Shown here piece after piece: positions 16,601 to 48,839 of a stretch of DNA of 64,000 nt. Every line of letters begins with the position of its first letter. Within the stretch, counting starts at the first letter, position 1. Location: the NCBI GenBank assembly GCA_002269645.1, contig NIVC01003902.1, forward strand, positions 6,560 to 70,559. The letters are read 5' to 3'. The position numbers were made by a program, and so were the translations under genes. The DNA comes from Macrostomum lignano (lineage: Eukaryota). Below the pieces are notes generated by a model. That model was not told the origin of the DNA. It did no database searches and saw nothing but the letters and a program-made list of their open reading frames with translations.

Positions 16601-18033
16601 GAAGTTACTGAGTTGGCAGCGGTAGCAATTTAAGTAGCAACTCACCGGCAACGATGAGAAGATGAAGCACCTAGAAACCTTGACCTTTCGGTGCTGAATC
16701 AAAACGTAGGGAATCGGCACTGAGACCCGGTCTAGCACGTAAGTGAATGCGATTATTAGCGCACAGCAGCTGAAATTAGATCACCTCTTCGATGCAATTG
16801 ATGGGTGGAAACTTAAAAAGTAGGCTCCACTGTTAAGCAATATTGCTAATTCTGTGCCAATAACAGTCATACAGCATTTCTTCTGTCCTCTTAACATCAT
16901 CTCAAATATGACTTCACTAAGAGTAGAATGCATCATCATAAGTTACTCGATGAAACTTCCCTCTGCTATTCCAGCCAAGGTACATATAAATATAGTTCAA
17001 CGGGTGAAAGCTGTACTTGTGCTACGAGGGACTCTAACTGCTAATTAGGACTATCAGGATGACTGCAACTCACGCCAACGCCTAGTAGAACTGCGGCGCA
17101 CACAGTTTCAAAATGGCGCCCATCACCCCAAAACCAATTAGAAAGATGGTTGGCGCCACGACTAGAGGAATGACGAATCGCAGCAGGTGACTCATCACTC
17201 CGGTGCTGCCGATGAAAATCTGAATGATGGAGCCAGCTGCGATGGTTCCGGCCACTTGTCCGACTCGTCTGTGCCAGATCCTCTCGACCGGCTGCGAGAA
17301 AACCGACGTACCGTTGTGTAGCAGTGTCGCATTGTCTGCAGCAGCGGTGAGTAAAGCATTTCACAATTACAAACTGGATATAAGTGGAGAACCAGATTTT
17401 ATCGACACTAAAAATGTTGCCAAAGACATTTCTCCGGGTTCTTAAAATGGACCGATACTGTTTTGACGCAGGAAACTGCTATTATACCTTTGACCTGTAG
17501 GTCCGGGCACTCAAGACTGTCTCCAGCCATGATGCCGATTGCCACAGGGTAGAACACGATGCTCGGGCCCTGAGCGATGGGCAGTCTGGTGCCCAGGGTG
17601 CACTGCACAAACGTTGTGATGCCCATGACGAAGAAGCTGGAGGCGATGAGGTTCGATTTGTCCACCTCGTCCTGTACACAGGCGGCGTCGAACAGGATGA
17701 TGACGCCGAATGCGCAGCCGCTGCTCATGATGACGAAGTGCTGGAAGCCCATGAGCAGCGTCAGGTACCAACTGGGCTTGTCGTTCAGTCCGTAGGTCAA
17801 GTGCAAGGCTTAAATTGCATCCGGTTGGGCAGATGGCTAGTTAATAGTTTTGAGATGTAAATAGCTAACGCACTCACTCACAGACACTCACTCGCAGACA
17901 CTCACTGGCTGGCAGACACTCACTCGCAGACACCCACTCGCAAACACTCACTGGCTGGCAGACACTCACAAACACCCCGCAGCTGCTCTCACTCACCTTC
18001 GAACTCAGTCTCAACCGGCGGTTCGGATTTCAT
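13586..18033 (-). pseudogene. SLC23: SLC23/NCS2 paralogue B, 8 exons, intact except for one in-frame TAG at codon 204
   Basis: Exons 18033-17997, 17808-17488, 17335-17074, 16769-16646, 16321-16015, 14841-14467, 14079-13984, 13824-13586. All phases match paralogue A. Exon 3 reads ...CAPQFY-TAG-AL, with the stop at 17082-17084. Confidence 0.8.
17868..17996. repeat. CACTCAC-rich degenerate repeat filling intron 1 of SLC23 paralogue B
   Basis: Repeated CACTCACTCGCAGA / CACTCACTGGCTGGCAGA units (GTGAGTG on the sense strand). Confidence 0.75.
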
Positions 18034-18999: not shown

Positions 19000-21600
19000 A
19001 GATGTTGAAGGTTCAGCCACTGAACTCTCCACTGAAGCCACCAGACGATTTAATTCCACGGCCGGAGTACGAAGGCAGAGAGACGCGAACTTGGGAGAAC
19101 GAGGCACGCAGACGAGCAAAAAGAGCCCAAGGCCCAAAGGAAGCAAGACAAGGCGGGGAAGAGGGCAAGCGCACAAAGATAGCGGGAAAAAACGTTAAAC
19201 GGAGGCAAAGCGCTGGCTGACGCGCTGCACGGTCATCTGGAGGTCCGCCACCGGCAGCTAGACATACCGGTGGACCGCTTCGCTTTGCCACCGGAAGGAA
19301 GTCGCTCCTCCGCGCCGCAACGAGTGCCCCGAAAGCGAGCGTGGCAGCAGGAGCAGCCGGCAGAAGAAATTGCGAGTAAGCGGCAGCAACTCATGACCTT
19401 TGCGAAATGCGAACAGATGACAACTCGAGGCGCGGGGCTGTTGAGCTGCAAATGGCGCAGAAGAGCTTCAAACGGACATAGATCGAGGCGAGCCCCAGAC
19501 GAAGGCTTCAGGCGTGGAATCCAAACGCGGTGGACTCTAGAGCAAATTGATTAGTCTTACTCTGCCGGATGAGAACCCAGAAACCGTCGCGCTGCAGACT
19601 GACGTCGCTTGTCAGCACCGCTGAATCCCTCGGCGTGCCCGCCCCACGCAGAGATTGAGCACAGAGGTTGGCGCAACGAAGCATGCCGTAAAAACCCACT
19701 AGCAAGCAACACCACATCGAGGCTCCTACCGGAGAGCCTACCTCCGTACGCGGCCGCAGCCGTAGCAATGCCTTGGGGCTCAGACCGGCCTTCGGCCTCG
19801 GCACCGAGCCGATATCGCGCTGAACTCCCCACAGTGTCGCCTGGACCAGCGAGCTCTGGGCGGAGACTGGCACACCGTGGAACTGCTTCCAAGCAGTTAA
19901 GCATACGCTTAACTGCTTGAGAAAGACGATGAAAAACTTCAACGCTAGCTGAGAGGCCAAAGCCAAGCACGGTGTCGATAATGTAGGTCGGCTTGGTGTC
20001 GCCACTGAAGGTCCACTTGATGCCGGTGGCGCCGAAGCAGCGGGTCGAGATAAGGCAAGACTGATAGGCATCCATCAGATCGACTTTTGCCATGTACCAG
20101 CCAGGACGCAGCATCCGAGTGAGCTCCGAGACGGTCGAGAACTTCAGTTTCTGCTTAGCCGTACGATAGGAGTTAATGGAATGACATTCCGGGACGCTAG
20201 CGTCGTGGATGATGCGCAGGCCCCCAGATGACTTAGGAACAGTACCCAGAGGACTGACAATAGTTGGCTTGAATGAAGTAGTCACATAGCGACCGTTTGA
20301 AATCTCTTTCTTGATCGCTGCTTCGATCAATTCGCGATTCTCAAGGCAGTGGTCGACTGATAGTTGGAGATCTCAGAAGGAGTAAAATCGAAAGTGTCAG
20401 TGACGTCAAATCCATTAGCAATTCCGTTAATTTGTTTCAGAGCTGGCGTCGATCAGCCGCACCGTGAAGAGGCTGCTTAGACGCGGCTTTCTTATTCTGA
20501 GATTCCACCTCTCCTGGGGCGAGAATATACTTAGCGAGCAGCTGGACCGACTCGGTACCCCGGTGAAATCCGTACTGGTGCTGGTTGATGCGGTAAGCCT
20601 CATCAAATCTCATCAATTTGGTGGTCGCGAAGCCCGCCTCGGCCAGCTCTGCGAGCTGGATGTTGAAGGCCAGGTATTGCCGCAGCTGCGTGACATCAAT
20701 GGAGCCATCCGGCCTCACAGAGAGCAGCTTTCCCCGTGAGAGCATATGGTCTAGGATCCTGGCATTACCGATGACCCACTGAGGAAAGGTGAGGGTGTCG
20801 GTGCTAGCTGCTTTACTTGCTTTGAAAACGATGGCGCTACCTTTGTCCTTCGCAATTGTACTTTCGTTAGGCAGGTGAGGCTGTAGAAAGTTCGCCACCA
20901 GCAAAGGGCCAGACTCCGTAGTCGGTGTTGAAGCTGTGTGGTTGCTATCCCCGCCCTCCAAAATTGAGCGGATAAGTTCAAACATACTCTGATCCGGCTG
21001 AAGCGGCTGGAGTGAAACCTTGGGCGGCTTGGTTGTCCATGCCGAGTTCCGTTCGGAGTTGCCGCTCCTCCCGCTGCAGCTTGAGAAGTTGGATCCGTCT
21101 TTCGGCCTCTAGGATCTCGCGCTCGACGTCAGGCCCGGTCACAGCGGCTGGACCGGACTCCGGCTCCTCCCTCGGTCTGGGCGGCTGTCTTAGACCGGCA
21201 GGTTGCTCGGCGTCGCGAAGTTCCAGAATGCGGGTAGCCATGTTTTTCTTTGAGCCACGTTTAGCGGCAGAGCGGGTCATACCAAGGTCGATTAAAATTT
21301 CAATTAGACAATCGCGTGAGAAGCCCTCCAGTTCATTGGCTGAGAGGTGCTTGTAGTCGCGACGCTCCATAAGATAAAAAATTGATGTCTACGACGTAGA
21401 AAAATCAACTCGCGCAAACAGAGCGCAAAGGAGCGGTACCCGACCGGTCATTAACAATCGTAAACGTCACCCCGTAAAGGGGCACGTTTACGGGCAAGAT
21501 GATGTTGCAACAGACGACGTAGTCCAGCCATTGGTGGCAAGCACTCTGCCAAAAGACGTCAATGACCTCGGAAACCATGCTGTTTACTAACTGCAAATAA
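19000..21600 (-). mobile_element. Internally deleted DIRS/Ngaro-type tyrosine-recombinase retrotransposon (gag - partial RT - YR); ends approximate
   Basis: Gag-like ORFs 21370-20978 and 20985-20437. RT N-terminal half VSPLGTVPKSSGGLRIIHDAS...MAKVDLMDAY...LGFGLSAS, truncated before YxDD. YR motifs GFYGMLR, IRQSKTNQF, LCPFEAL, SGHSLRRGGAT (about 19300-19330) and RWQSEAVHRY (about 19262-19290), with frameshifts. Confidence 0.85.
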
Positions 21601-23894: not shown

Positions 23895-26329
<2,435 letters not shown>

Positions 26330-28833
26330 GATTTTAGGCTTTGGCAGTTGCAGTGGCGAATGCTAATTTCTTTGCTTGCTGTGCTGATGAGTATACTGAT
26401 GTCGAGTCCGCGGAAAATGGTTTGAGTAGAATAAAACCAGAGGCTTTAAGCGGGAGGGGCGAGAGAGGGGCGGGAGAGGGGCGGGAGAGGGGCGGCAGAG
26501 GGAGGGAGAGGTGGTTGGCTCAAGCTCAAGAGCTCACCCTGAGCGCTGCAGCAAGGTTTCTCTTTCTCTCCTGTTGGCCTTTGTTATACTGGTAGCAACG
26601 GCAACGCAGGTAGAAATTGCGGGGGGTGAATTGAGAAGCAAAAGAAAACTCAGAACGAAAGGGTGGAACTAGCAGGGGGGTAAGAGATCGTACTCTGGGT
26701 TTGTTCGAGGAAAGGCAAGGTAAAAGGCTAGAAAGGAAAGGCAAGGAAACTGCGATGATGGTCTTTACTTTGAGTAGCTGAGGGCGGCTCTCCTGCGTGC
26801 GAGAGGTTGGCGACTGGCCTTGGAGCAGAGGGAGAGGCAGAGATATGACGAGCAGACAAAATAGAAGCATGCGGGCTCTGTGCAAGTCTCCTAGCCGAGG
26901 AGGGGTGAGACCTTGGTTTCACAGGATTTGCTGTGGCAACGGTGTGCTCAGCCAGAGAGCTGCAAGCACTGGGAGATGGGGTTGAGCTGCAGGGCGAGGG
27001 AAGGTAGGAATGATCGTACGCTGGGATTCCAGGCGAGGACCGGGGGGGGTCGAGATTTGAGGACGGTTATGCCTTCCTCCATTTATGACAGAGTAAGTGG
27101 AGCTGTATGGATGATGATGCATAGGAAGAGCCTGAATAAGTACAGAACTCTATTCTTAAATTTCCAGCAGCTATGCTTTTTTGCAGGATATAAAGAAAAA
27201 AGTCTCACAATTTCTGCTACCAGTTGTCCAAATTTGGTACACCTTGTACTTTTGATGATGCAGAATTTGAATTGCCTGTAGTTGCTAATCAAAGTTCAAA
27301 CCAGCATACCAAATCTACCTAAATACCTAAAGGTAGATTTGTGAAAACATACTATTTTAGATTCTAAGTTTACAAGAGTGGACAATTGCGACAGCCAAAA
27401 GCATTCTCACAGTCCTCGTGTTGCTAGCCTATAGAAGGGAGCTGGCTGCGGAGCTCCAACTAAAAAAGTTGCACTTTTGCTTGAGTATCAGAGTCTATCA
27501 GGCTGGCAATACAATGGTTATAGCTGATTAAGAGGTAGAATAGAGTGAGGTACGCGTGTATAGAGAGCAACTGCCAGCCAAAGAGTGACTACAAATAACA
27601 GACACAAGCTTTCAAAGACTCTTCAGACGAAGACCCGCTTATTTAATTTAAGGCTACGTCCAATGTTGTACGAGCCTAGCATCTCCAACTGCCATGCAAT
27701 AATGAATGCTAGTATAAAGATATTCCCTCGAAATTATACATATCTTTCCAGCTAGTGGTGCAACGTTGGGCGAGTCATGATCTCATTCAAGCTGTTTAGC
27801 TCAGTGGGTGGGGTATGAAGTTCTGTCCGTTGATTTGAGCACAGCAAGTCACACTAGTGTGTACACTGCCCTGCCATCCGCTCAGCCCTTCACATAGCGG
27901 ACAATGCCTGCTCAATATGTAGCTCTGAGTAGCGGAAAACCTCCGCAATAAAAACCTATAGCTAGCTGCAGCCGCCTGCCGGTTGCCATGGTTGCAGAAG
28001 CTGTTAAAACCTGGGAGGCTTCTCTACACCCCTGCCCCCTCCGTGTGAGCTGCGCTATGGAGCAAGCCTTTCATAGAGAATGCTTCAGAGTCTTGCTTTT
28101 TGCTGCGGCTATAATATTCTCTCTCTACCTGTGTCTCTCACCAGCTCACGCAGAGAATCGTTGAGTCCTGGCTTAGTTGAGTGATTTGAATGCCTTCAAC
28201 CAGACCAGACCTTCAGATGTGCGCAGTGTACTGTATACTTACACTTCACCACTAATCTAATCAGAACTAATTTATGACTGGAGATTGAAGTCCTTAATTC
28301 TGCATAAATATATGATTTTCTATCCATGAAGCCATTCATGTTTCAGTGTGGGGGCGGCTCGTGTGCAGGGTCTACGATATTTGCCATTATTATACCTAAT
28401 CTAGACTATGACAGATTGCCTATTCAAAATGATTTATTTGCTTGATTTTTTTCTTATTGATCGGTTGGAAAACTTCTCAGATCGGCTATACGAGTCAGTC
28501 TCGAGCATGAAAAGCATAAAATTTCCGTTTTTAATCTGCAGCAACCTGATCTGCTGGGAGAGGGCAAATTGGCCTGCGTATTCTGCTTGTGCAATTCATG
28601 GTTTCAATGTGCATGCGATGGTTACTATGCATGACGTTCACTGCCTTAAGTAATTAGTTGATGTGAAATTCAGGTCTACGTGAGAGCGCACCGATATCAA
28701 ATCTCGCATAAGCTGTTATTTATGATTTGGAAACATTTTTCGTCTTACTTCATAATCTTCTCTTAAAAATCGGTGACACTTACTCTCAGTAGCATACTTG
28801 GTACTAGTAGGAAGTGAGTTTTTTATGAGTTAA

Positions 28834-31187
28834 CAGTAGAAAGACCATGGGGTGTATTTCAAATACACACATTTTTCCTTTGTTTGTATCTCCAAAAATA
28901 TTCTACCAATTGCCATGAAAATCCAGAACAAGGGCTAAAATTTTCCACTCTATTCGATGAAGCAACATTGAGAATCACAAAAAAATCGACATCGTCGAGA
29001 TATTCAACGATTCTCCTCGGGGTGTCTGGTGGCAAAAACCACCAACATTGGCAAACATTTTCTGCTCACAAAATCTCATCATGAAACCACGTCGGCTCAA
29101 CAAACTATGCACATCAGTCGCAGGGACTTTTGCTCTCAGCATCCCAGGCCCTAGGGTCCCCTTCATCTCCGTCTGGAGCATCGGCGGCGACCATCGGGAC
29201 CTTCAACAAAAGCACCTGATCGGCATCTCAGAGACGGCTGCGTTCCCAACTGAAGTGGAAGAATCCTCTTCTGCATGCAGCATCCAGTCAGTAGACATAA
29301 TCGGTGAATGAAATGTACGATGGCGACCCTCTAGGCTGACCTGTAGACATACAGGCGACCTTCGGGACCTTCAACAGAGTGCCACCACGCGGCCCCGACG
29401 AGCTGACACCGCCAACATCGTGATTTTTCTATCAAGGCACCAAACAAGGCATGTCTGCATATGATACAATGGTCCTGCACCATGTTAAATTGGAGAGTTA
29501 CATATTTAACTGGCGACTGAAAAATATAACATATTTAATTTATCAAAAATGATATTACAGTATTTCAAAAGTGATATTACAGCAAATTCAGAGCAGAAGG
29601 ATCTGAACAGGCAGTAGGACACACACGTGAGCTCCTCAAAAAACCGGAACTCGCTCGTGTGTGAAGCCATGTTTTGAGTTGAATTCTTGAGATCTGCTGG
29701 CAGGCCACGACGAGTGCGAATCACTATTCCAAAAAAACTTGAATCCCATTTCTCGGTACAAGTGATTGGCCAGCGCAGGACTCGAGAAGAATCTGTCACA
29801 TGTGATGCTGTACCAGTGTCCTCTGAATGGATCAGCCAAGCGGGAAACAACTTGCCTACCACTCCACACCTCTGAGCCCTTGGCCAGCCGAGCATCGGAT
29901 TCCTGTGATGCAAAAGTAGTGGACAGCAGTGTCCTTTGCCAGTGCAGATTTCCGCATCGAACACATAGCGGAGGTCCATGTCATCCTGAATCTCTGGATT
30001 CCCAGCCGATGTCAGCAGGAACAGCTTGGCACCATTGCGACCGTTGGGGGTCCAATCCCGCAGCCCGCGGCAGTTTTCGAGAACTGCACAGCGGTGTTGA
30101 ACTTTCTTGGGAAGGCGGGCGCCATCTGACGCCCGGTGCCATGGGCCCTGGCCTGAGCGCGCCCGAATGGAAGAAGACCGGGCTTCTCCTTCAGAAAGAC
30201 CGTGAAGTCACAGTTCACACCCCAAGAAGACAACCAGAGTTTCTTCGACGCAGAGGTACGGCCCGGAAAGGACAGGATGGCGCAGCTGACTGACAAAGGT
30301 GTCCCACAGGCGTCGGATGCCGTAGAGCTTGTCCGTTGCGGCAGCCCGCTGACGATGTTTGGCAGTTTCGAATTTAACATGGTGCAAAAGCATTGTATAA
30401 TACGCAGACATGCCTTGTTTGGTGCCTTGATAGAAAAATCACGATGTTGGCGGTGTCAGCTCGTCAGGGCCGCGTGGTGGCACTCCGTTGAAGGTCCCGA
30501 AGGTCGTCCAGACAGAGCTGAATACTGAACATGGTGCAGGACCATTTTATAATATGCAGACGTGCCTGGTTTGGTGCCTTGATAGAAAAAGCACGATGTT
30601 GGCGGTGTCAGCTCATCGGGGCCGCGTGGTGGCACTCTGTTGAAGGTCCCGAAGGTCGCCTGTATGTCTACAGGTCAGCCTAGAGGGTCTCCATCGTCCA
30701 TTTCATTCACCGATTGTGTCTACTGACTGAATGCTGCATGCAGAAGAGGATTCTTCCACTTCAGTTTTGGGAGATGCCGATCGGGTGCTTTTGTTGAAGG
30801 TCCCGATGGTCGCCGCCGTTGCTCCAGACGGAGATGAAGGGGACCCTGGTGCCTGGGATGCTGAGAACAAAGGCCTTTACGACAGATGGACCCAAATTAT
30901 TGAGCCAATATGGATTCACCATAAAGGTTTATACAGTGTAGTGTTGGTTGTCCTTGCCACCAGTGTCTTCGACAAAAATAGTTGAATATCTCGACGATGC
31001 TGACGTTGGATGACTTTGAAAGTTAATTCGTCAGAAAGGGCGGTAAATTTTGATCCATATGGTGGAATTTTACGAAAATCGGTAATTCGGTTTGCGACCT
31101 ATCGTGAAATGGGTTGAGTGTATTTGTACGAGTAATACACCCCTGTGGTCTTTCCCCATGGGGAAAAATAGCGTGGTCTTTCTACTG
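28834..31187 (-). mobile_element. Non-autonomous piggyBac-like element with fold-back (two inverted 5' ends) structure
   Basis: TTAA at 28830-28833 and 31188-31191. 14-bp perfect TIR CAGTAGAAAGACCA. Arms about 28834-29490 and 30371-31187 are inverted homologues. Central frameshifted transposase fragments: DKLYGIRRLWDTF, LCVEETLVVFLG, YVFDAEICTGK, ITCDRFFSSPALA. Confidence 0.88.
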
Positions 31188-31278
31188 TTAATCTAATCAG
31201 ATTATATATTGTATAGATTCCAGAAGTAAAAACCATGCTAACGAGAACAACAAAATTTAAGGCCGTTATTACTAGTAG

Positions 31279-31527
31279 TGTTGTGTATTGCAAAGGCATG
31301 CGATGCGTAGGGGTAGTTCGGGGACAGCGTTTCTAGAAACTTCCACCGCGGACTTGTTTACGCATAGTTCCAGAAGTTTCCTTCCCCGGTCTTTCTAGAA
31401 CTTTCCTTCCCCGCGTGCATAAATATACGAGCCGCCCTCCTATTGGCCAAGCCCCTCTTTTGGTGCCACTGAGCGCCCGGATAATTATCTATCTTGTTTC
31501 TGCGTTCGTTAATTCAACAACAGAACA
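31279..31527 (+). repeat. 5' LTR (249 bp)
   Basis: Identical to 35560-35808; contains CATAAATA (TATA-like) and ATTGG (reverse CCAAT). Confidence 0.95.
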
Positions 31528-31539
31528 TTGGCGACGAGG

Positions 31540-34500
31540 ATGGCGGCTAGCATCCCCGCACCCACGCCCTTCCTGGCGAACTGCGGATCACCGACAGTAC
31601 CATGGAGCCGATGGATTGAGGCCTTTGAATTTTATTACGAGGCGGCCCAATTCAAGGAGCCCGAAGGGAAGGAAGAGGCGAAACCGCTGAAGAAGAGCCT
31701 TCTGCTCCATCTGCTTGGATTCGAAGGTCAGCGGGTTGCTCGAGCACGCCAAGCAATCAAGGAGAACGACACGTTCGCAGCAACTAAGGCGGAGCTCGAG
31801 AAGATCTTCGGCGAGAAGCCCAACGTGATGGTAGCCAGATATCGCTTCCGCCAGCGCCAGCAGCTACCCGGCGAGGACGTCAAGACCTTCGTGGCAGCCC
31901 TGAGGGAGCTGACGGAGCTGTGCAACTACGGCGCAATACAGGACGATCTCATCAGAGACCAGCTGGCTGAGAAGACCAGTAACCCCAGAATCCGAGAGAG
32001 GCTGCTGACGGAGAAGGTGGAGGACCTCAACCTGGCGAAAGCACTCAGCATCGCGGTCTCCATCGAGGAAGCCTCCAAAGAAGCCAAGGCGATGGCGCCA
32101 TCAACCTCGAGCACGGCAGCCGTCCAATCGATCCGACAGCCGAGGGGCCAGAAGGTCGCTGCAAAGGGGAGGCACCGCCCAGCACCAGCTGGCAGGACGG
32201 CCAAACCCGGCGGCGCCTGCACGCGCTGTGGGCGAGACCACGGACCGACGACCCCCTGTCCGGCCAAGGGCAAGACATGCGAGGCCTGTGGCAAGAAGAA
32301 CCACTTCCGGAGTTGCTGTCGCAGCCAGCAGGCTGCTGTCAATGCCGCGGACGAGGTGATCACAGTCTACGCAGTGCCGGGTGGCGACAGGGAGGTCCGG
32401 GCGACGCTGGAACTCGGACCGGACAGGACCGCTGTCAGCCTGATGGTGGACTGCGGCGCAAGGGTGTCGCTGCTGTCCAGACAGACCGCCGATCGGATCT
32501 CAGGTGCAGTCACCTCTCCCACTACGACGAAGCTGCGTGCCTACGGCGGACTGCCGATCCAGCTAAGTGGTGTCACCGAGCTGGAGGTGCGCTACGGCGA
32601 CAAGGCGATGCAGCACCGGTTCTTCGTTGCGCCAGGCGGCGACAACATCGTCGGTAGAGACCTGATGGAGAAGCTGGGCTTCCGAGTCGACCTTAGCGGG
32701 CAGCCGCCCGGAATCGCGGAGGTCAGCGACTTGACGGCGGACTTGCAGGCGCGGTACCCAACGACCTTCAGCGGTGCGATAGGATGCTGCGCCGGCGCTG
32801 TACACCAGCCCAAGGTCGACCCAGCAGTGCGACCCGTCCAGCAGCCACTCCGCCGCCTGCCCCTCATGCGACAGGAGCAGGTCGGTGCCGAACTCGACAA
32901 GATGGAGAAGGACGGCATCATCGAGCGAGTCAACGCTAGCGAGTGGGTCTCCAATCTAGTGGTGACGGCGAAGAAGGATGGCAGCATCCGAATCTGCGTC
33001 GACGTTCGCGAGCCGAACAAGGCACTGATCGTCGACAAGCACCCGATGCCACAGCTGGACGAGATTGCCTCGAAGATCAAGAAAGGCCGTGGCCGAGTGT
33101 TCAGCAAGATTGATCTGAAGTCGGGCTACATGCAGATGCAGCTGCATGAATCGAGCCGCAATCTGACAGCCTTCATCACGCACAAGGGGCTCTTCCGCTA
33201 TCGTCGAGTTCCCTTCGGCCTGGCATCGGCACCAGCTGCTTTCCAGCGCATGCTCGACGATCAGGCCGCCGACCTCGACGGAGTGGAGCACATCCTGGAT
33301 GACTTCATCGTGTACGGGCGCAGCGAGGAGGAGCATGATCGACGACTGGAGAAGTTGCTCCAGCGCCTCGAGGACAAGGGCATGACGGTGAACAAGCAGA
33401 AGTGCGCCTTCAAGCAGAAAGAGGTCGAATTCTTCGGATTCGTGATCTCGGAGGCCGGCATCCGGCCAACGGAGTCAGCCACAGCGGCCATCAGGGACAT
33501 CCGGCAGCCCGGAGATCAGAAGGCGTTGAAGTCATTCCTAGGCGCCGCTAACTTCTTGATGCGCTTCGTGCCGCACTACGCCGACATCACAGAGCCGCTT
33601 CGAAGGCTCCTGAAGGCCGACTCCAACTTCGACTGGACGCCGGAGTGCCAACGGGCGTTCGAAGCAGTGAAGGACGCCATCAGCAAGGCACCGACGCTCG
33701 CCCACTTCGACCCGAAGGCCGACACTATTGTCACCACGGATGCCAGCGCCAAGGCCATCGGAGCCCAGCTGTCGCAGATCCAGGACGGCGTCGAGCGACC
33801 GGTCGCCTTCGCCGCCCGAGCGCTGACGACGACGGAACAGCGCTACGCCGCGAACGAGCGCGAGGCACTGGCTAGCCTCTGGGCGATGGAGAAGTGGCAT
33901 TTCTACCTCTACGGTCGCCACTTCGAGCTGCGCACAGATCATCAGGCGCTGCAGCAGCTACTTCTCGGACCGACCGGCACGGGACACCGGCCACTGCGGA
34001 TCCATAGGTGGTGCGACCGGCTGCTGCAGTACGACTTCCATGTGCGCTACCTGCCAGGAAACAGCAACTACGTGGCCGATCTGCTGTCCCGGTGGAGCAG
34101 CGGATCGGAGCTGAACCTGATCCACCTGCCCGACACTCCAGGCCCGAGAGTCAAGGCGGTCACACTGGAAGCACTTACCGCAGGGACCTCGGCTGACGAG
34201 ACACTGGGGACAGCCATCAGGAGCGTCATCAGCGGCCGGTGGCCAGCTGACATCGACGACGTTGAGCTGCGGGCTCTCTGGAAGGTGCGCGAACAGCTCA
34301 GCGTCTGGAACAACGGCAAATGCCTCGCCTTCCAGGAGAGAGCAGTCATCCCGGAGTCTCTCCGCGGCCATCTTCTCGAGCAGGCTCACGAAGGGCACCA
34401 GGGCATCGTGCGCACCAAGCAGGCGCTCCGCGACTCAGTCTGGTGGCCCGCCATGGACAAGGCGGTCGAGACCTTCGTGCGACACTGCGTAGCGTGCGAG

Positions 34501-35511
34501 ACAGCCGAGAAGAACTTTAAGGTCAGTCCGGCCCCGCTCAAGACCATACGCTGGCCAGATTCACCATGGGCAGAGATCGCCGTGGACATCGTCGGAGAAC
34601 TGCAGGCGGCGCCGGCCTCTAGCAGGTACCTCATCGTCGTGACGGACCTGCACAGCAAGTGGCCGGAGGTCATCCCGACGGCCAGCATCACCACGGAGAC
34701 CATCTGCCGTGCGATGCGCAGCCTGTTCGCAAGGTGGGGGCTGTGCGAGAAGGTGCTGACGGACAACGGCCCGCAGTTTGGCAGCGAGTTCTCGGACTTC
34801 TTGGCCGAGCAGGGCATCCGGCACGTCAAGACCAGCCTCTACCATCCGCAGACCAACGGCCAGACGGAGCGTCTCAATCGGTCGCTGCTCGCCAGCATCA
34901 GAGCGGCCATGGCGGAGAACAGGCCGTTTCAAGACGCCGTGACCAACTTCTTGTCTGCCTACCGGAGCTCCAAGCACAGCCTGACGGGCAAGTCACCGGC
35001 CGAGCTCATGCTGGGTCGGAAGTGGCGCACCGCGATCACCATGCTGTCTCCCGGAGGGGGAATGACAACGACCGAGGCGACGCCTCAGGCACTGCGGCAG
35101 CAAATCGAGGCGCGGCAGCAGCGGATCAAGGCCTACACCGATGCCAGACGAAGGGCCCGCCCCGAGACGTTCCACCCCGGCGATTGGGTGAGAATCCGAC
35201 GGCCCACCAAGAAGGGCAAGCTGGGTACCCGCCTCTCACGGCCACTACAAGTGCTCCGTCAGGCGGGACACCACGCGGTCGAGCTCAGCGACGGCACCAG
35301 ATGGAACCAGCAGCGGCTGATCCGAACGCCGCACCCGGCGCAGCCGAGAGAGCGGTTCGACCCACTGGTGGACTCGGCGCCAACGACCGGAGCCGGCACG
35401 GCGGCACCGGCGGCACCGGCGGCGGAGCCTCCGGCAAGAACAGCAGCGCCCCGCCGATCTGAGCGAGCCAGGCACCCGCCGATACGCTTCATGAACTGCC
35501 GCTGGGACTGA
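31540..35511 (+). CDS. Single Gag-Pol polyprotein, 1323 aa (Gag with 2 CCHC knuckles, protease, RT, RNase H, integrase)
   Basis: Uninterrupted ORF. CTRCGRDHGPTTPC and CEACGKKNHFRSCC; protease LMVDCGA; RT IRICVD...KIDLKSGY...PFGL...ILDD; RNase H TDAS...TDH; integrase HEGH...CVAC, VDIVG, TDNGPQF, ERLNR. Confidence 0.96.
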   Translation: MAASIPAPTPFLANCGSPTVPWSRWIEAFEFYYEAAQFKEPEGKEEAKPLKKSLLLHLLGFEGQRVARARQAIKENDTFAATKAELEKIFGEKPNVMVARYRFRQRQQLPGEDVKTFVAALRELTELCNYGAIQDDLIRDQLAEKTSNPRIRERLLTEKVEDLNLAKALSIAVSIEEASKEAKAMAPSTSSTAAVQSIRQPRGQKVAAKGRHRPAPAGRTAKPGGACTRCGRDHGPTTPCPAKGKTCEACGKKNHFRSCCRSQQAAVNAADEVITVYAVPGGDREVRATLELGPDRTAVSLMVDCGARVSLLSRQTADRISGAVTSPTTTKLRAYGGLPIQLSGVTELEVRYGDKAMQHRFFVAPGGDNIVGRDLMEKLGFRVDLSGQPPGIAEVSDLTADLQARYPTTFSGAIGCCAGAVHQPKVDPAVRPVQQPLRRLPLMRQEQVGAELDKMEKDGIIERVNASEWVSNLVVTAKKDGSIRICVDVREPNKALIVDKHPMPQLDEIASKIKKGRGRVFSKIDLKSGYMQMQLHESSRNLTAFITHKGLFRYRRVPFGLASAPAAFQRMLDDQAADLDGVEHILDDFIVYGRSEEEHDRRLEKLLQRLEDKGMTVNKQKCAFKQKEVEFFGFVISEAGIRPTESATAAIRDIRQPGDQKALKSFLGAANFLMRFVPHYADITEPLRRLLKADSNFDWTPECQRAFEAVKDAISKAPTLAHFDPKADTIVTTDASAKAIGAQLSQIQDGVERPVAFAARALTTTEQRYAANEREALASLWAMEKWHFYLYGRHFELRTDHQALQQLLLGPTGTGHRPLRIHRWCDRLLQYDFHVRYLPGNSNYVADLLSRWSSGSELNLIHLPDTPGPRVKAVTLEALTAGTSADETLGTAIRSVISGRWPADIDDVELRALWKVREQLSVWNNGKCLAFQERAVIPESLRGHLLEQAHEGHQGIVRTKQALRDSVWWPAMDKAVETFVRHCVACETAEKNFKVSPAPLKTIRWPDSPWAEIAVDIVGELQAAPASSRYLIVVTDLHSKWPEVIPTASITTETICRAMRSLFARWGLCEKVLTDNGPQFGSEFSDFLAEQGIRHVKTSLYHPQTNGQTERLNRSLLASIRAAMAENRPFQDAVTNFLSAYRSSKHSLTGKSPAELMLGRKWRTAITMLSPGGGMTTTEATPQALRQQIEARQQRIKAYTDARRRARPETFHPGDWVRIRRPTKKGKLGTRLSRPLQVLRQAGHHAVELSDGTRWNQQRLIRTPHPAQPRERFDPLVDSAPTTGAGTAAPAAPAAEPPARTAAPRRSERARHPPIRFMNCRWD

Positions 35512-35559
35512 TTAAAGTGAAGCTTGGGGACTGTTGGACTCCTTGAAGGAGGGGAAGAA

Positions 35560-35808
35560 TGTTGTGTATTGCAAAGGCATGCGATGCGTAGGGGTAGTTC
35601 GGGGACAGCGTTTCTAGAAACTTCCACCGCGGACTTGTTTACGCATAGTTCCAGAAGTTTCCTTCCCCGGTCTTTCTAGAACTTTCCTTCCCCGCGTGCA
35701 TAAATATACGAGCCGCCCTCCTATTGGCCAAGCCCCTCTTTTGGTGCCACTGAGCGCCCGGATAATTATCTATCTTGTTTCTGCGTTCGTTAATTCAACA
35801 ACAGAACA
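35560..35808 (+). repeat. 3' LTR (249 bp)
   Basis: Identical to the 5' LTR; preceded by the PPT and followed by the TSD. Confidence 0.95.
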
Positions 35809-37190: not shown

Positions 37191-40100
37191 CTACGCCATT
37201 TGCGGCTGCATTTTGTATTGCACTCCGCTATGCGGGATGTCCTCATCCTGCTGCCGCTTGTGGTAGAAGATCAGCAGCGCGCCCAGGAGCAGCAGGATCT
37301 GGGGGGGAGTGACAGCACAGAGAGCAACATGTACTTTTTAATCAACGCTCTTTTTCCCTGACGCATCTCACCCACACAATCAATTGACGAGAAATCAAAA
37401 ACCTCACTGAAGCACCTCAACTGCAGTGCCTCACTGAAGCACCTCAACTGCAGTACCTCACTGAAGCACCTCAACTGCAGTACCTCACTGAAGCACCTCA
37501 ACTGCAGTACCTCACTGAAACACCTCACTGCAGTACCTCACTGAAGCACCTCAACTGCAGTACCTCACTGAAGCACCTCAACTGCAGTACCTCACTGAAG
37601 CACCTCAACTGCAGTACCTCACTGAAACACCTCACTGCAGTACCTCACTGAAGCACCTCAACTGCAGTACCTCACTGAAGCACCTCAACTGCAGTACCTC
37701 ACTGAAGCACCTCACTGCAGTACCTCACTGAAGCACCTCAACTGCAGTACCTCACTGAAGCACCTCAACTGCAGTACCTCACTGAAGCACCTCAACTGCA
37801 GTACCTCACTGAAGCACCTCAACTGCAGTACCTCACTGAAGCACCTCAACTGCAGTACCTCACTGAAGCACCTCAACTGCAGTACCTCACTGAAGCACCT
37901 CAACTGCAGTACCTCACTGAAGCACCTCAACTGCAGTACCTCACTGAAGCACCTCAACTGCAGTACCTCACTGAAGCACCTCAACTGCAGTACCTCACTG
38001 AAGCACCTCAACTGCAGTACCTCACTGAAGCACCTCAACTGCAGTACCTCACTGAAGCACCTCAACTGCAGTACCTCACTGAAGCACCTCAACTGCAGTA
38101 CCTCACTGAAGCACCTCAACTGCAGTACCTCACTGAAGCACCTCAACTGCAGTACCTCACTGAAGCACCTCAACTGCAGTACCTCACTGAAGCACCTCAA
38201 CTGCAGTACCTCACTGAAGCACCTCAACTGCAGTACCTCACTGAAGCACCTCAACTGCAGTACCTCACTGAAGCACCTCAACTGCAGTACCTCACTGAAG
38301 CACCTCAACTGCAGTACCTCACTGAAGCACCTCAACTGCAGTACCTCACTGAAGCACCTCAACTGCAGTACCTCACTGAAGCACCTCAACTGCAGTACCT
38401 CACTGAAGCACCTCAACTGCAGTACCTCACTGAAGCACCTCAACTGCAGTACCTCACTGAAGCACCTCAACTGCAGTACCTCACTGAAGCACCTCAACTG
38501 CAGTACCTCACTGAAGCACCTCAACTGCAGTACCTCACTGAAGCACCTCAACTGCAGTACCTCACTGAAGCACCTCAACTGCAGTACCTCACTGAAGCAC
38601 CTCAACTGCAGTACCTCACTGAAGCACCTCAACTGCAGTACCTCACTGAAGCACCTCAACTGCAGTACCTCACTGAAGCACCTCAACTGCAGTACCTCAC
38701 TGAAGCACCTCACTGCAGTACCTCACTGAAGCACCTCAACTGCAGTACCTCACTGAAGCACCTCAAAGGCATCCAACGCACCCCAAAGATTCTCACAGAT
38801 AAACAGGTATTCAAAATGAGCGAAACTCACCTCTACTCCAAGCCACCCGGCAACGCCAAAGAACAAGCGATCGAAACCAGATTTCAGATAGTTGTCGAAT
38901 ACACGGGCAAACTTTTCGTAGCAGCCGTTTTGGCGGTTGCTGTACGGGTCGCTTAAGTTGGCGTAGGCGCACTTGAAGTCCTGCCTTTCCAAATAGTAGT
39001 TGCAGCAGGAAAACGGATAGCTGGCGTCTGAAATAGAAAATTAATCAAGCATTCCGCGTTACCAATGCGAAATCCGTTGCTTATAGTCTCTGAATTTTAA
39101 ATTTTCTAATACTGAATCCAGTCCGCAACTCACTGTAGTAGGAGAATTTAGTTTTGTTGTTGCTCCTGTACCCGATCGTTCTGTTCCAGTTGGTTGCCAT
39201 GGTGTAAAAGTCGTTGCCATTATTTACGCCGCAGCAGCCGCCGACGACCTGAACAACGTCAAGCTGCATCGAGCCGACGTCCCGATTCTGCGAGCCCTTG
39301 TAGTTTTTCACTTGCTCCTCAAGCCAGTTGCGGCTGCAGTCCTTCATCTGGGGTTGGGGAGCGCGCCATCCCGATAGTATGCACTCTAGTAGGTACGATC
39401 GCATATCAGGGGTCGGCAAACTCCCGCCCACGAAAACTCTCTATCCGGCCCTCGGGTTCTTTGAACTCCTCTCAGCTCTTTTCTCTTTTCTCACCTCTAC
39501 TCTCTTTTTCTCTCCTCTCTCCTTTCCCCTCCTCTCTCCTCTTCTCTCCCCTCCTCTCTCCTCTCTCCCCTTCTCTCCCCTCCTCTCTCCTCTCTCCCCT
39601 TCTCTCCCCTCCTCTCTCCTCTCTCCTCTTCTCTCCCCTCCTCTCTCCTCTCTCCCCTTCTCTCCCCTCCTCTCTCCTCTCTCTCCTTCTTTCCCCTCCT
39701 CTCTTCTCCCCTTCTCTCCCCTCCTCTCTCCTCTCCCCTTCTCTCCCCTCCTCTCTCCTCTCCCCTCCTCTCTCCTCTCTCCCCTTCTCTCCCCTCCTCT
39801 CTCCTTCTTTCCCCTCCTCTGTCCTTCTTTCCCCTCCTCTCTTCTCCCCTTCTCTCTCCTCTCTCCCCTTCTCTCCCCTCCTCTCTCCTTCTTTCCCCTC
39901 CTCTCTTCTCCCCTTCTCTCCCCTTCTCTCCCCTCCTCTCTCCTCTCCCCTCCTCTCTCCTCTCTCCCCTCCTCTCTCCTCTCCCCTCCTCTCTCCCCTC
40001 CCTCCTCTCTCCTCTCTCCCCTTCTCTCCCCTCCTCTATCCTTCTTTCCCCTCCTCTCCCCTTCTCTCCCCTCCTCTCTCCCCTCCCCTCCTCTCTCCTC

Positions 40101-40987
40101 TCCCCTCCTTTCTCCTCTTCCCTCCTCTCCCCTCCTCTCTCCTCTTCCCTCCACTCTCCTCTCCCCTTCTCTCCCCTCCTCTCTCCTACAAAAGTTTATA
40201 AAACGTTTGCCGACCCCTGATGCATATGCACGATAAGCTATACGTTCACGTCAATGCACATTTTTATCACAGGAAGAAGCACTTACCACATCGCTGTTTG
40301 TGAACCAGAAGATCACAAGGCCGGCCTGGCTCAGCAGAACAAGCGCGACCAACACAGAGTACTAAAATAGGCAGAAAGCGCTACTAAATTCACAGTGGAA
40401 ATTCAATGCGTGTTTTCTAATTTCATTTAGTTTTGCACGATACTACTGACATCTTCATCAGTAGATGCTAGTGAATTTTGCAATTAAATTATTTGTTAGA
40501 TTCGGTATGGACTTTTTGAATTCGGTGTAAAATTCTTACAATGATGAGGCAGGAAGGAACGCCCCAGCAAGCGCCGCAGCATCCCAGACAGCTCATGACG
40601 ATAATCAGGACCCCAAGAATTATAAACACGATAGCGCTAATCATGGTATTTGACGCCATAGCCTGATGCAGGCTCTCAACGTCAACGGAGGTTTCGATGT
40701 TGTCAGTAGTGGTTAACATCGAGCTAACGTGCTGGTCGAAAGCTGAACGCACCACCCAGTAGGCCCACAACGTCAAACAGCCCGTGGCCAGGAGTGCCAG
40801 GCCCAGAATCTGGAAAGAAGAGTGAGTACATTGAATCCAACTAGCAGGTAAACCGATTGCATAGTTCAAGGTTTGGAATAATTTTGAATGCTTTCTCATC
40901 AGCTCAGCTTACCGCTGTCAGCACGTTGACAAAAGAGATGAAGCAGCAGCAGCACCATCGGCAGCAGGTCAAGCAGCCGGACCCCAT
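37191..40987 (-). CDS. Tetraspanin paralogue B, 6 exons, 312 aa
   Basis: Exons 40987-40913, 40809-40540, 40361-40287, 39347-39134, 39027-38831, 37298-37191; phase-consistent, 939 nt, same intron phases as paralogue A. GCCGAC, and an EC2 with GCCGV, FSCC, C, GCY. Confidence 0.9.
37401..38766. repeat. 27-bp minisatellite (CCTCACTGAAGCACCTCAACTGCAGTA) x about 50 in tetraspanin B intron 5
   Basis: Near-perfect units; source of the RCFSEVLQL ORFs. Confidence 0.97.
39407..40219 (+). mobile_element. hAT (Charlie-type) MITE with an internal CT-rich tract of about 700 bp, in tetraspanin B intron 3
   Basis: Perfect 15-bp TIR CAGGGGTCGGCAAAC / GTTTGCCGACCCCTG. 8-bp flanks TCGCATAT and ATGCATAT match at 6/8. 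Confidence 0.8.
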
Positions 40988-42295: not shown

Positions 42296-43296
42296 TAGGG
42301 AGAGGGAGAGAAACTGCGATGTAGATGGAGCCGCCCGCTTATCCGTTGCCCAGGGTCTCCCCTCTGCCGCTGTCTTCCCGAGCTCGCGCACTGTTTTCCT
42401 AAGGCCCCTCTCGTTCCTTCTCTACTCCGGGCCTCCGGCTCTATCTCGCACTCCATCTGAGAGTTCTCTGTTCCGAGCATCAGCCGAGCCCCGAGCTAAT
42501 TGACTTGAGCAAGGAGGCAGGCCAGCCGCCAGGGCTGCGGTTTAGGGCAAAATTGGAATTGGGGGATGGGGCTCTTTCCTCTTCTGCTCCCTCTCCTCTC
42601 AGTCTCTCCTCCCGCGCAACTCTTCTTATTCTCATTTCCAGGCCTCCCCCGCGGGCTTGGAGTTCTTCTCCTCTGCGAGTTTTCTTGCTGTCTCATTACG
42701 GCGCTCCCCGTCCTTCCTCTTTCCACTTAATTTAGCGCGGGCTTACAGCCAACGACGCTTCGGAGATATCGCTAGCCAGTGGTTTGAGGCGTACCGCTGC
42801 CTCAGCCCCGCGGGAGGCCATCAAGGGCAATAAGTACACGGCGCGGTTTTTAAGCTAAAAATTCCAAAGATCCCATCTCCTTGCAGTTGCCTGTCTTCCT
42901 TCCTGCCTCGGAATCGTTGCGAGTCTATTTTTGGCTGCATGGTCTGGCTGGGACGGCCAAGAAAGCTTTGGCTATAGCGGCCCGGTTGCTTCAGTCTCCC
43001 TCTCGTCCCTCCCTGCCGAATCCCTCTTAGCCAAGGGGCCACCGGGTGCGCTGAGAGCTGCTGCTGTTCTGAGAGGGGATTGGAAAACTATATAGTGGGA
43101 GCTGGGCAGGTTCCTCCCAGTTTTAATGTGTCAGCGAGGCCGAGCAAGTGGATTATTCATCTCCTCTCCCCTCTCTCGGGCATTGCCGAGCTCTCAGCCA
43201 TGCCTCACTGGATTGAAGGCTGCCCGAGGAAACCAAATTTGCATTAGCAAAATAACATTTTCAAGCAGTCAGAGAGGCCAACTGTGTAAAGTAGAA

Positions 43297-44030
43297 CTGG
43301 GATGGAGAGCTGAGAGACTGGGAGGATGGAGCCGCAGCACTGGGATGGAGAAGTGAGAGACTGGGAGGCTGGAGCCGCAGCACCGGGATGGAGAAGTGAG
43401 AGACTGGGAGGCTAGAGCCGCAGCACTGGGATGGAGAAGTGAGAGACTGGGAGGATGGAGCCGCAGCACCGGGATGGAGAAGTGAGAGACTGGGAGGATG
43501 GAGCCGCAGCACCGGGATGGAGAAGTGAGAGACTGGGAGGATGGAGCCGCAGCAGCACCGGGATGGAGAAGTGAGTGGCTGGGAGGATGGAGCCGCAGCA
43601 GCACCGGGATGGAGAAGTGAGTGGCTGGGAGGCTGGAGCCGCAGCACTGGGATGGAGAAGTGAGAGACTGGGAGGATGGAGCCGCAGCACTGGGATGGAG
43701 AAGTGAGAGACTGGGAGGCTGGAGCCGCAGCACTGGGATGGAGAAGTGAGAGGCTGGGAGGCTGGAGCCGCAAGGCTTGGATGGAGAAGTGAGAGACTGG
43801 GAGGATGGAGCCGCAGCACTGGGATGGAGAAGTGAGACATGGGAGGCTGGAGCCGCAGCACTGGGATGGAGAAGTGAGAGACTGGGAGGCTGGAGCCGCA
43901 GCACTGGGATGGAGAAGTGAGAGACTGGGAGGATGGAGCCGCAGCACTGGGATGGAGAAGTGAGAGGCTAGGAGGCTGGAGCTTCAAGACTTGGATGGAG
44001 AAGTGAGAGACTGGGAGGCTGGAGCCGCAG
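43297..44030. repeat. 43-bp minisatellite (GGGATGGAGAAGTGAGAGACTGGGAGGCTGGAGCCGCAGCACT) x about 17
   Basis: Directly visible tandem units. Confidence 0.93.

Positions 44031-48798: not shown

Positions 48799-48839
<41 letters not shown>

What the first reader, a model, noticed from the sequence alone, without database searches (positions are those of the whole stretch)
28830..31191. Fold-back piggyBac made of two 5' ends: candidate hairpin-RNA silencer of its own family
Seen: TTAA-flanked. The whole left arm (about 28834-29490) is an inverted homologue of the right arm (about 30371-31187). Similarity is roughly 60-70% in the outer part and roughly 90% or more over about 360 bp (29130-29490), and the right arm has an extra tandem duplication of about 150 bp. 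The arms contain the 5' transposase region and the roughly 900-bp loop holds the decayed DDD core. Established: canonical piggyBac uses distinct left and right ends, and inverted-duplication derivatives such as maize Mu killer produce hairpin RNA that silences the family. Inference: either a symmetric-end mobile unit or an endogenous siRNA source.
Basis: partly seen in the sequence, partly recalled or inferred. Interest (0 to 1): 0.7.

Follow-up and report, generated by a model that had tools for sequence, protein, structure and literature searches.

The report
Rearranged dead piggyBac copy in flatworm
This is a broken, TTAA-flanked piggyBac-type transposon in the flatworm Macrostomum lignano that keeps two different, normal-looking ends but carries an internal inverted copy of about 360 bp, so it could fold into a long RNA hairpin if transcribed, which nothing yet shows it is.

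Summary
TTAA flanks the element on both sides and the 14-bp terminal repeats are perfect. The left arm (28834-29494) is an inverted homologue of the right arm (30368-31187), and the right arm has an extra 152-bp tandem copy. Arm identity changes in one sharp step at 29134/30866. It is about 96% inside the step and about 73% with many gaps outside it (Fisher p=1e-14).

The window is Macrostomum lignano contig NIVC01003902.1. A frameshifted piggyBac transposase remnant lies on the minus strand. It matches residues ~150-380 of a 580-aa relative. The first catalytic Asp is Glu, and the third Asp and the Cys-rich domain are missing.

The two termini are not two copies of one end. The left has a 1-nt spacer and the right a 30-nt spacer between the terminal repeat and a palindromic internal repeat. 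That mirrors the canonical piggyBac left/right layout.

My best reading is a dead element with natural, imperfect ~300-bp subterminal inverted repeats. One error-prone repair event then added the inner inverted copy, the tandem duplication and AT-rich filler.

A transcript would form a stem of more than 330 bp. Transcription, small RNAs and other copies could not be tested, so the silencer idea is unproven.

The parts
28830..28833 (.). Left TTAA target-site duplication
   Evidence: Sequence; matches 31188-31191.
28834..28847 (+). Left 14-bp terminal inverted repeat, CAGTAGAAAGACCA
   Evidence: 100% complementary to 31174-31187 (I8).
28849..28868 (+). Left internal repeat GGG-GTGTAT-N5-ATACAC, 1 nt from the terminal repeat (short-spacer, LE-type end)
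   Evidence: Sequence. Canonical piggyBac has a palindromic internal repeat at a 3-bp spacer on its left end.
28834..29133 (+). Left outer arm, read as a natural imperfect subterminal inverted repeat
   Evidence: 72-75% identity to 30867-31187 with many gaps, K2P 0.31-0.36, above shuffles.
29134..29494 (+). Left inner arm (segment S1, plus orientation); its last ~100 bp encode transposase residues ~150-186
   Evidence: About 96% identical to the right inner arm. Translation RVPPRGPDELTPPTS*FFYQGTKQGMSAY.... Homology ends 6 nt beyond an internal TTAA at 29485-29488.
29495..29620 (.). AT-rich filler with a short 22-bp-spaced direct repeat; no homology to transposase, arms or the rest of the window
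   Evidence: D6; no collinear match beyond residue ~380.
29620..30367 (-). Loop: frameshifted transposase remnant, residues ~186-380 of P0001
   Evidence: tblastn matches 30399-30220 (E 3e-10), 30266-30180, 30039-29674 and 29893-29750 (E 5e-10) in three frames. Weak Pfam DDE_Tnp_1_7 hits in the right order.
30368..30866 (-). Right inner arm (segment S1, minus orientation), contiguous in coding with the loop; holds the tandem duplication
   Evidence: The coding match crosses the arm/loop boundary without a gap.
30376..30658 (-). 152-bp-period tandem duplication (copies 30376-30506 and 30528-30658, 92%) joined by a ~21-nt linker
   Evidence: D1. Three-copy comparison.
30867..31187 (-). Right outer arm, read as a natural imperfect subterminal inverted repeat
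31118..31140 (-). Right internal repeat GTGTAT-N11-ATACAC
   Evidence: Sequence.
31144..31173 (-). 30-nt spacer of the right end (long-spacer, RE-type end); holds a second TGGTCTTTC 28 nt from the terminal one
   Evidence: Sequence; (I11); alignment. Canonical right end has a 31-bp spacer.
31174..31187 (-). Right 14-bp terminal inverted repeat
   Evidence: I8.
31188..31191 (.). Right TTAA target-site duplication

Best explanation
This is a dead, non-autonomous copy of a piggyBac-like element in Macrostomum lignano.

**What the parent looked like (inferred).** It had normal, differentiated ends: a 14-bp terminal repeat plus a palindromic internal repeat, set 1 nt from the terminal repeat at one end and 30 nt at the other. 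These sat inside ~300-bp imperfect subterminal inverted repeats.

**How it was rearranged (inferred).** During double-strand-gap repair after an excision, or during replication, one newly made strand copied its own subterminal repeat. It then switched, in register, to the homologous repeat of the other end and copied inward. This produced an inverted copy of the 5'-proximal segment S1, which runs up to transposase residue ~186. The same low-fidelity synthesis slipped once, giving the 152-bp tandem duplication. It ended in ~125 bp of AT-rich filler where the two strands were joined. The gene beyond residue ~380 was lost.

**What is shown.** The geometry, the step in identity, the end asymmetry and the truncated, frameshifted transposase.

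**What is inferred.** The repair mechanism, and which arm is the original. The canonical orientation, and the fact that all the anomalies then lie on one strand, favour the left arm as native and the right inner arm as the copy.

**Function.** The element cannot make transposase. Its ends look intact, so it could be moved in trans. It has no demonstrated function.
For: - **Step in identity.** Arm identity changes in one sharp step, not a gradient: 14/335 mismatches inside against 60/223 outside, p=1.2e-14.
- **Outer divergence predates insertion.** TTAA plus terminal repeat are 18/18 perfect although the adjacent outer arms are 27% mismatched.
- **End asymmetry.** Spacers of 1 nt and 30 nt before a palindromic internal repeat parallel the canonical 3-bp and 31-bp layout with its palindromic 19-bp repeat (PMC5861402; PMC5381638).
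- **Long subterminal repeats are known.** Natural piggyBac-like elements carry imperfect subterminal inverted repeats of up to 400 bp.
- **Arm and loop are one gene.** Transposase coding runs without a break from the right inner arm into the loop.
- **Similar age of the duplications.** The left copy and the two tandem copies differ pairwise by 6, 8 and 11 sites. Private changes are 1, 5 and 6. This fits one event and a near-ancestral left copy.
- **Marks of error-prone repair.** There is an AT-rich filler with a short internal repeat, and a 16-bp indel with 2-nt microhomology.
- **Not an assembly palindrome.** The arms differ by 4-27% and enclose an 873-bp loop.
Against: - I could retrieve no other family member, so the parental end structure is inferred from this one copy and from the literature.
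- The transposase remnant lies next to the long-spacer end. That is the reverse of canonical piggyBac unless the right inner arm is the copy.
- The excess of private changes in the two tandem copies (5 and 6 against 1) is not statistically secure (about p=0.05-0.16).
- Gene conversion between older, full-length arms could give the same step.
- The inner breakpoint lies on a TTAA (chance about 0.07). This might instead point to a transposase-mediated event.
Confidence: 0.6

Rival explanations
1. It is a true fold-back of two identical ends. The whole ~660-bp arm was duplicated in inverted orientation in one old event. The arms then diverged, and arm-to-arm gene conversion later re-homogenised only the inner 360 bp.
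For: The arms are collinear and in register along their whole length. Outer similarity is above chance. A conversion tract would also end in a sharp step.
Against: - With 27% mismatch in the outer arms, perfect conservation of 18/18 terminal bases needs selection for mobility over a long period.
- The 29-nt difference at the tips would have to recreate the canonical short/long spacer layout by chance.
- The inverted and tandem copies look about equally old. A late conversion would not predict that.
Confidence: 0.15
2. It is a functional hairpin-RNA locus, a flatworm counterpart of maize Mu killer. Transcription through both arms gives a long double-stranded stem. The stem is processed into siRNAs or feeds piRNA production against the family's transposase mRNA.
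For: - The predicted whole-element RNA has 541 arm-to-arm pairs, 334 of them in the inner arms, and a longest perfect helix of 72 bp. The inner-arm duplex energy is -670 kcal/mol.
- The stem includes ~100 nt of transposase coding sequence.
- M. lignano has abundant piRNAs with a ping-pong signature (PMC4604429).
- Mu killer and Ac/Ds precedents exist (PMC3440606 and bioRxiv 10.1101/2020.01.07.897926).
Against: - There is no evidence of transcription or small RNAs.
- No flanking promoter reading into the element is evident. The adjacent LTR promoter points away from it.
- No close family member that would need silencing was found. The best of 1.84 billion representatives is 42% identical.
- The arms have drifted 4% and the element carries a filler and frameshifts, as expected of neutral decay.
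- The cited M. lignano small-RNA study describes miRNA and piRNA populations but no endogenous siRNA class.
Confidence: 0.07
3. It is one member of an amplified non-autonomous family that moves as this long-inverted-repeat unit, using a transposase supplied in trans.
For: The TTAA duplication, the perfect terminal repeats and both internal repeats are intact. Non-autonomous derivatives are the commonest fate of DNA transposons.
Against: - There is no second copy in 64 kb.
- Metagenome scans for the terminus gave only chance-level single hits.
- No related ORFs were found in the protein collections. However, M. lignano genomic ORFs appear not to be indexed there, so this absence weighs little.
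Confidence: 0.15
4. It is an assembly artefact, a chimeric fold-back long read.
For: Mlig_3_7 is described as a redundant assembly (PMC12801592).
Against: Artefactual palindromes are near-perfect and lack a loop. Here the arms differ by 4-27%, one arm has an extra 152-bp copy, there is an 873-bp unique loop, and the element has proper TTAA and terminal-repeat borders.
Confidence: 0.02

Closest known systems
piggyBac-like elements of structural group SG2 (terminal repeat plus imperfect subterminal inverted repeats of 11-400 bp; Bouallegue et al. 2017, PMC5381638)
   Same: TTAA target duplication. The terminal repeat starts with C and ends with G. Imperfect subterminal inverted repeats of about 300 bp. 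A DDE_Tnp_1_7-type transposase remnant.
   Different: This copy is non-autonomous: it is truncated after residue ~380 and frameshifted. It also carries a secondary ~360-bp inverted duplication and a 152-bp tandem duplication that are not part of the SG2 definition.
Canonical piggyBac (IFP2) of Trichoplusia ni
   Same: TTAA specificity. A short terminal repeat followed by a palindromic internal repeat at a very short spacer on one end and a ~30-bp spacer on the other (3 and 31 bp in piggyBac, 1 and 30 nt here).
   Different: The sequences are unrelated at the DNA level. The internal motif is GTGTAT/ATACAC rather than TGCGT/ACGCA. The transposase is only distantly related. The ORF remnant abuts the long-spacer end.
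Mu killer of maize (inverted duplication of the MuDR 5' end; PMC3440606), and inverted duplications made by alternative transposition of Ac/Ds (bioRxiv 10.1101/2020.01.07.897926)
   Same: An inverted duplication of the transposase-proximal part of a DNA transposon that could give a long hairpin RNA.
   Different: Mu killer has two copies of the same terminal repeat region and is transcribed from a flanking gene, and its siRNAs and heritable silencing are demonstrated. Here the ends are different, there is no evident outside promoter, and there are no expression or silencing data. The superfamily and host kingdom also differ.
Internally deleted or rearranged derivatives made by abortive gap repair (P-element and Ac/Ds deletion derivatives with filler DNA; my own knowledge)
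   Same: Loss of internal coding sequence. A junction with AT-rich filler and short repeats. Microhomology at indels. Intact ends.
   Different: This copy adds a template switch between the two subterminal repeats, which gives an inverted duplication rather than a simple deletion.
Foldback and Galileo-type elements with long, tandem-repeat-built inverted repeats (e.g. Tetris, PMC4079207)
   Same: Long inverted arms and one tandem duplication inside an arm.
   Different: The arms here are not built of tandem repeat arrays. The superfamily is different (piggyBac, TTAA). The outer arms are only ~73% alike.

Membership tests
piggyBac superfamily (piggyBac-like element) | TTAA target-site duplication | tested here: met
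   TTAA at 28830-28833 and 31188-31191.
piggyBac superfamily (piggyBac-like element) | Short terminal inverted repeats beginning with C and ending with G | tested here: met
   CAGTAGAAAGACCA and its complement, 14/14 (I8). Criterion from PMC5381638.
piggyBac superfamily (piggyBac-like element) | Transposase of the DDE_Tnp_1_7 (PF13843) type | tested here: met
   Single ORFs fall below Pfam's cut-off (16-18 bits against 22.4). The stitched remnant gives 249 hits at E<=1e-3. The best is P0001 at E 1.7e-25, which itself hits PF13843 at 1.3e-47. The order along the minus strand is collinear.
piggyBac superfamily (piggyBac-like element) | Intact DDD catalytic triad and C-terminal Cys-rich domain (autonomous element) | tested here: not met
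   The first Asp position is Glu, the second is kept, and the third Asp and the Cys-rich domain are absent. There are at least 4 frame changes and stops. It is a member as a defective copy, not as an autonomous element.
piggyBac superfamily (piggyBac-like element) | Asymmetric internal repeats at the two ends (short against ~30-bp spacer) | tested here: met
   1-nt spacer on the left and 30-nt spacer on the right before GGG-GTGTAT...ATACAC. Canonical values.
Mu killer-type hairpin-RNA transposon silencer | Inverted duplication that includes transposase 5' sequence | tested here: met
   Inner arms are ~96% identical over ~360 bp, and the last ~100 bp is transposase-coding.
Mu killer-type hairpin-RNA transposon silencer | Transcription through both arms | not testable with these tools
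   No RNA data. Only a fold prediction of a hypothetical transcript.
Mu killer-type hairpin-RNA transposon silencer | Small RNAs from the stem, and silencing in trans of active family members | not testable with these tools
   No small-RNA data. No close family member was found in any collection I could reach.
Foldback-type element (arms made of tandem repeat arrays) | Long inverted repeats composed of tandem subrepeats | tested here: not met
   There is only one 152-bp duplication, in one arm, plus a 23-nt motif present 2 and 3 times.

The most novel reading that the evidence does not exclude
The fold-back is a working hairpin-RNA locus of an animal: a piggyBac counterpart of maize Mu killer. 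When transcribed, it would yield siRNAs or seed piRNAs against its own family in M. lignano. Transcription might even depend on conditions, because the element lies 88 bp from a long terminal repeat that carries three canonical heat-shock elements.
Probability: 0.06. Interest if true: 0.6.

Novelty: new member of a known kind. Interest (0 to 1): 0.27.

Why it matters
As it stands, this is one decayed transposon copy with an instructive rearrangement.

- **End layout.** It shows that the piggyBac left/right end layout is kept in a very distant flatworm lineage. That layout is a short spacer on one end and a ~30-bp spacer on the other before a palindromic internal repeat. This is a useful comparative point for how the transposase reads its ends.
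- **Origin of long inverted arms.** It gives a clean example of how long inverted arms can arise from short subterminal repeats by an in-register template switch.
- **If the hairpin is expressed.** If it were transcribed and processed, it would be a rare animal example of transposon self-silencing by an inverted-duplication derivative. M. lignano has transgenesis, RNAi and published small-RNA libraries, so the idea is cheap to test.

Tried and rejected
- **Stitched remnant against the word-indexed protein search.** No hit. The exhaustive HMMER search was needed.
- **Exact look-ups.** I looked up 16 window ORFs and the first-ATG version of the neighbouring gag-pol ORF. None is in the collection. 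M. lignano genomic ORFs are therefore evidently not indexed, and the lack of 'other copies' there means little.
- **Metagenome scans.** The pattern of terminal repeat plus internal repeat gave 0 hits. The 18-mer terminus gave 35 single hits, about the chance number, and none extends. The best, L028, is unrelated AT-rich DNA.
- **Contig of the closest relative, P0001 (L001).** It has no TTAAC or GTTAA termini and no long inverted repeats, so it says nothing about parental ends. Its run accession is in no paper.
- **Literature on endogenous piggyBac in M. lignano.** Nothing found.
- **Rfam.** No hit in the window.
- **Loop as a foreign element inserted at the central TTAA of a palindrome.** Rejected. 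CACCATG-TTAA-CATGGTG is palindromic, but transposase coding runs straight across the right arm/loop boundary, and the loop ends are not piggyBac termini.
- **Hybrid-end or sister-chromatid transposition into the internal TTAA.** Rejected. No element terminus abuts that TTAA.
- **Arm peptide RVPPRGPDELT..YQGTKPG as the third-Asp region (P0001 residues 399-425).** Rejected as chance (E 0.04-0.2). The same stretch extends a significant collinear match at residues ~150-186.
- **Whole-region fold with the fold tool.** I did it in a script instead.
Full report
**1. Where the window comes from.**
A window ORF at 14303-14884 (minus strand) is 94-98% identical to Macrostomum lignano solute-carrier proteins. 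The contig that encodes one of them is NIVC01003902.1 of assembly GCA_002269645.1 (Mlig_3_7). It matches window 1-21814 at 100%. The window is therefore positions 6560-70559 of that 70,559-bp contig, from a free-living flatworm.

**2.
TTAA flanks the element at 28830-28833 and 31188-31191. The 18 terminal bases are perfectly complementary. Even allowing three mismatches, this terminus occurs only at these two places in 64 kb.

The arms are inverted homologues over their full length. The outermost part, with the termini excluded, still scores more than four standard deviations above shuffles. The right arm has an extra copy of a 152-bp unit, 30376-30506 and 30528-30658, at 92% identity.

Identity does not fall gradually. 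Mismatches occur every 2-5 nt up to L29133. After that they become rare. Inside the step there are 14 mismatches in ~335 aligned columns plus two indels. Outside there are 60 in 223 plus many gaps. Fisher p is 1.2e-14. Kimura distances are 0.04-0.06 inside and 0.31-0.36 outside.

**3. What is encoded.**
On the minus strand, two ORF fragments give weak DDE_Tnp_1_7 hits in the right order. I stitched a 303-aa conceptual translation and searched it exhaustively against 1.84 billion representative proteins. It gave 249 hits at E<=1e-3. The best is P0001: 580 aa, 42% identity, E 1.7e-25. P0001 is a full DDE_Tnp_1_7 protein with a Cys-rich tail. Other top hits that carry names are insect piggyBac-derived proteins.

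tblastn of P0001 places residues ~177-363 on 30399-29674 in three different frames. A second relative extends the match outward to 30465. Weak similarity continues to about residue 380, near 29620.

- The aligned first catalytic Asp reads Glu.
- The second Asp is kept.
- Everything from the third Asp to the Cys-rich domain is missing.
- 29495-29620 is AT-rich with a short internal repeat and matches nothing.
- The arms outside their inner ~100 bp have no credible protein similarity and no continuous frame.

The coding match crosses the right arm/loop boundary without a break. The right inner arm and the loop are therefore one contiguous piece of a former gene. The left inner arm repeats its first part in the opposite orientation.

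**4. The ends are two different ends.**
Reading inward, the left end is:
- TTAA
- CAGTAGAAAGACCA
- 1 nt
- GGG-GTGTAT-TTCAA-ATACAC

The right end is:
- TTAA
- the same 14 bp
- a 30-nt spacer holding a second copy of the terminal half-site 28 nt in
- GGG-GTGTAT-N11-ATACAC

Canonical piggyBac has a 13-bp terminal repeat and a 19-bp internal repeat built of two inverted 5-nt motifs. The spacer is 3 bp on the left end and 31 bp on the right end. The internal repeat is where the transposase's Cys-rich domain binds (PMC5861402; PMC5381638). The parallel is close.

Had the element been made from two copies of one end, both tips would have started identical. In addition, 27% mismatch in the outer arms cannot be decay in place, because the 18 terminal bases are untouched. 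Under neutral decay at that level, the chance of that is roughly 0.7^18, about 0.002 (my arithmetic). So the outer-arm difference was already present in the element that inserted here.

Published surveys describe piggyBac-like elements with imperfect subterminal inverted repeats of 11-400 bp (group SG2). The outer ~300 bp fit that description.

**5. How the inner duplication most likely arose (inference).**
The structure, in window orientation, reads:
- left outer arm
- S1, plus orientation
- filler
- S2, minus orientation
- S1, minus orientation, with the tandem copy
- right outer arm

S1 is the segment up to residue ~186. S2 is residues ~186-380.

One template switch explains this. A strand primed from one broken end copies its own subterminal repeat. 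It then re-anneals to the homologous repeat of the other end and copies inward from there. That explains why the junction is exactly in register at 29134/30866. The two nascent strands are then joined through filler.

The left copy and the two tandem copies differ pairwise by 6, 8 and 11 sites. Private changes are 1, 5 and 6. This is compatible with all three dating from about the same event, and with the left copy being closest to the ancestor.

Suppose the right inner arm is the copy. Then every anomaly lies on one synthesis tract: the switch, the 152-bp slip, the 16-bp indel and the filler. The short-spacer end would also sit upstream of the gene, as in canonical piggyBac. The alternative, with the left inner arm as the copy, is equally simple in number of events. 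I cannot decide between them from one copy.

The inner breakpoint falls on a TTAA inside the coding sequence (29485-29488 and 30374-30377). I estimate this as about a 7% coincidence and leave it unexplained.

**6. The hairpin idea.**
A transcript of the whole element is predicted to pair arm to arm at 541 positions, 334 of them in the inner arms. The longest perfect helix is 72 bp, and the inner-arm duplex energy is -670 kcal/mol. That would be a good substrate for double-stranded-RNA processing. About 100 nt of the stem is transposase-coding.

Everything else in the silencer hypothesis is untested.
- I had no RNA or small-RNA data.
- The only nearby promoter I can name is the long terminal repeat that starts 88 bp to the right, and it reads away from the element.
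- No close relative that could be a target was found.
- The published M. lignano small-RNA study reports miRNAs and piRNAs with a ping-pong signature, and piRNA clusters. I saw no mention of an endogenous siRNA class (PMC4604429).
- Mu killer (PMC3440606) and Ac/Ds alternative-transposition products remain functional analogies only.

**7. Other copies.**
There is none in the window. Metagenome scans returned only chance-level hits. The protein collections hold nothing closer than 42% identity. Exact look-ups of this locus's own ORFs also fail. The M. lignano genome is therefore evidently not ORF-indexed there, and this absence is weak evidence. I could not reach the rest of the assembly. That search is the decisive missing step.

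**8. Verdict.**
The object is an ordinary kind of thing: a defective, rearranged piggyBac-like element. It has two points of modest interest. One is the conserved left/right end architecture in a flatworm. The other is a textbook-clean, in-register inverted duplication. The silencer reading is possible but has no positive evidence.

Noticed in passing
window 31279-35808: A complete, very young Ty3/gypsy-type LTR retrotransposon lies 88 bp to the right of the piggyBac element. Its ~250-bp LTRs (31279-31527 and 35560-35808) are 100% identical. It has a 5-bp target duplication, AGTAG, and an uninterrupted 1327-aa gag-pol ORF with protease, RT, RNase H and integrase domains.
   Followed up: partly
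window 31331-31405 and 35612-35686: Each LTR carries three canonical heat-shock-element trimers (TTCnnGAAnnTTC). These six are the only matches in the window, against 0.87 expected. This fits the published heat-activated, HSE-bearing LTR families of M. lignano; one Mag family is reported with three HSEs (PMC12801592). I did not assign the family.
   Followed up: partly
window about 7600-11800 and 13800-18000: A tandem segmental duplication with a ~6.17-kb period carries two copies of a solute-carrier (Xan_ur_permease) gene. Blocks are 89-99% identical. Only the first copy corresponds to the annotated protein P0154.
   Followed up: no
window 29485-29488 and 30374-30377: The inner boundary of the inverted duplication lies on a TTAA inside the transposase coding sequence (codons for V-K-F-E). 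Arm homology ends 3-6 nt beyond it. This may be coincidence (about 7%) or a hint of a transposase-linked break.
   Followed up: partly
window 29186-29208, 29354-29376, 30486-30508, 30638-30660, 30792-30814: A 23-nt motif, GGCGACCWTCGGGACCTTCAACA, recurs twice in the left arm (168-bp spacing) and three times in the right arm (152- and 154-bp spacing). Its meaning is unknown; it could be a binding site or a repeat within old coding sequence.
   Followed up: no
window 25061-26200, 37300-38713, 39194-40236, 43261-44050, 53312-54463, 56504-57834, 58315-59745: The window is unusually rich in micro- and minisatellite arrays. Examples are a tetranucleotide array that reads SIYL in translation and a 27-bp minisatellite at 37.3-38.7 kb. 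They generate long spurious ORFs.
   Followed up: no
window 47460-48857 (minus strand): An exon-like ORF with a poly-Gln N-terminus and the first zinc finger of a nuclear-receptor DNA-binding domain (zf-C4, E 4e-9). It runs into a '[15 protein letters not shown]' minisatellite, presumably intronic.
   Followed up: no
window 62236-62988 (minus strand): An ORF with a rhodopsin-family 7tm_1 match (E 5.5e-11); probably a GPCR gene exon.
   Followed up: no
window 19508-20985 (minus strand): Overlapping ORFs of 182-257 aa have no Pfam hit. One reads ...GLRIIHDASVPE..., which looks like it may be retroelement-derived. Unidentified.
   Followed up: no
L001 633-2375: The closest relative of the transposase remnant is an intact 580-aa piggyBac-type ORF on a 3.6-kb Logan contig from run SRR31628394, organism unknown. 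It has no recognisable TTAA or terminal-repeat ends within 630 bp upstream or 1250 bp downstream. It may be a domesticated gene, or its ends may lie outside the contig.
   Followed up: partly
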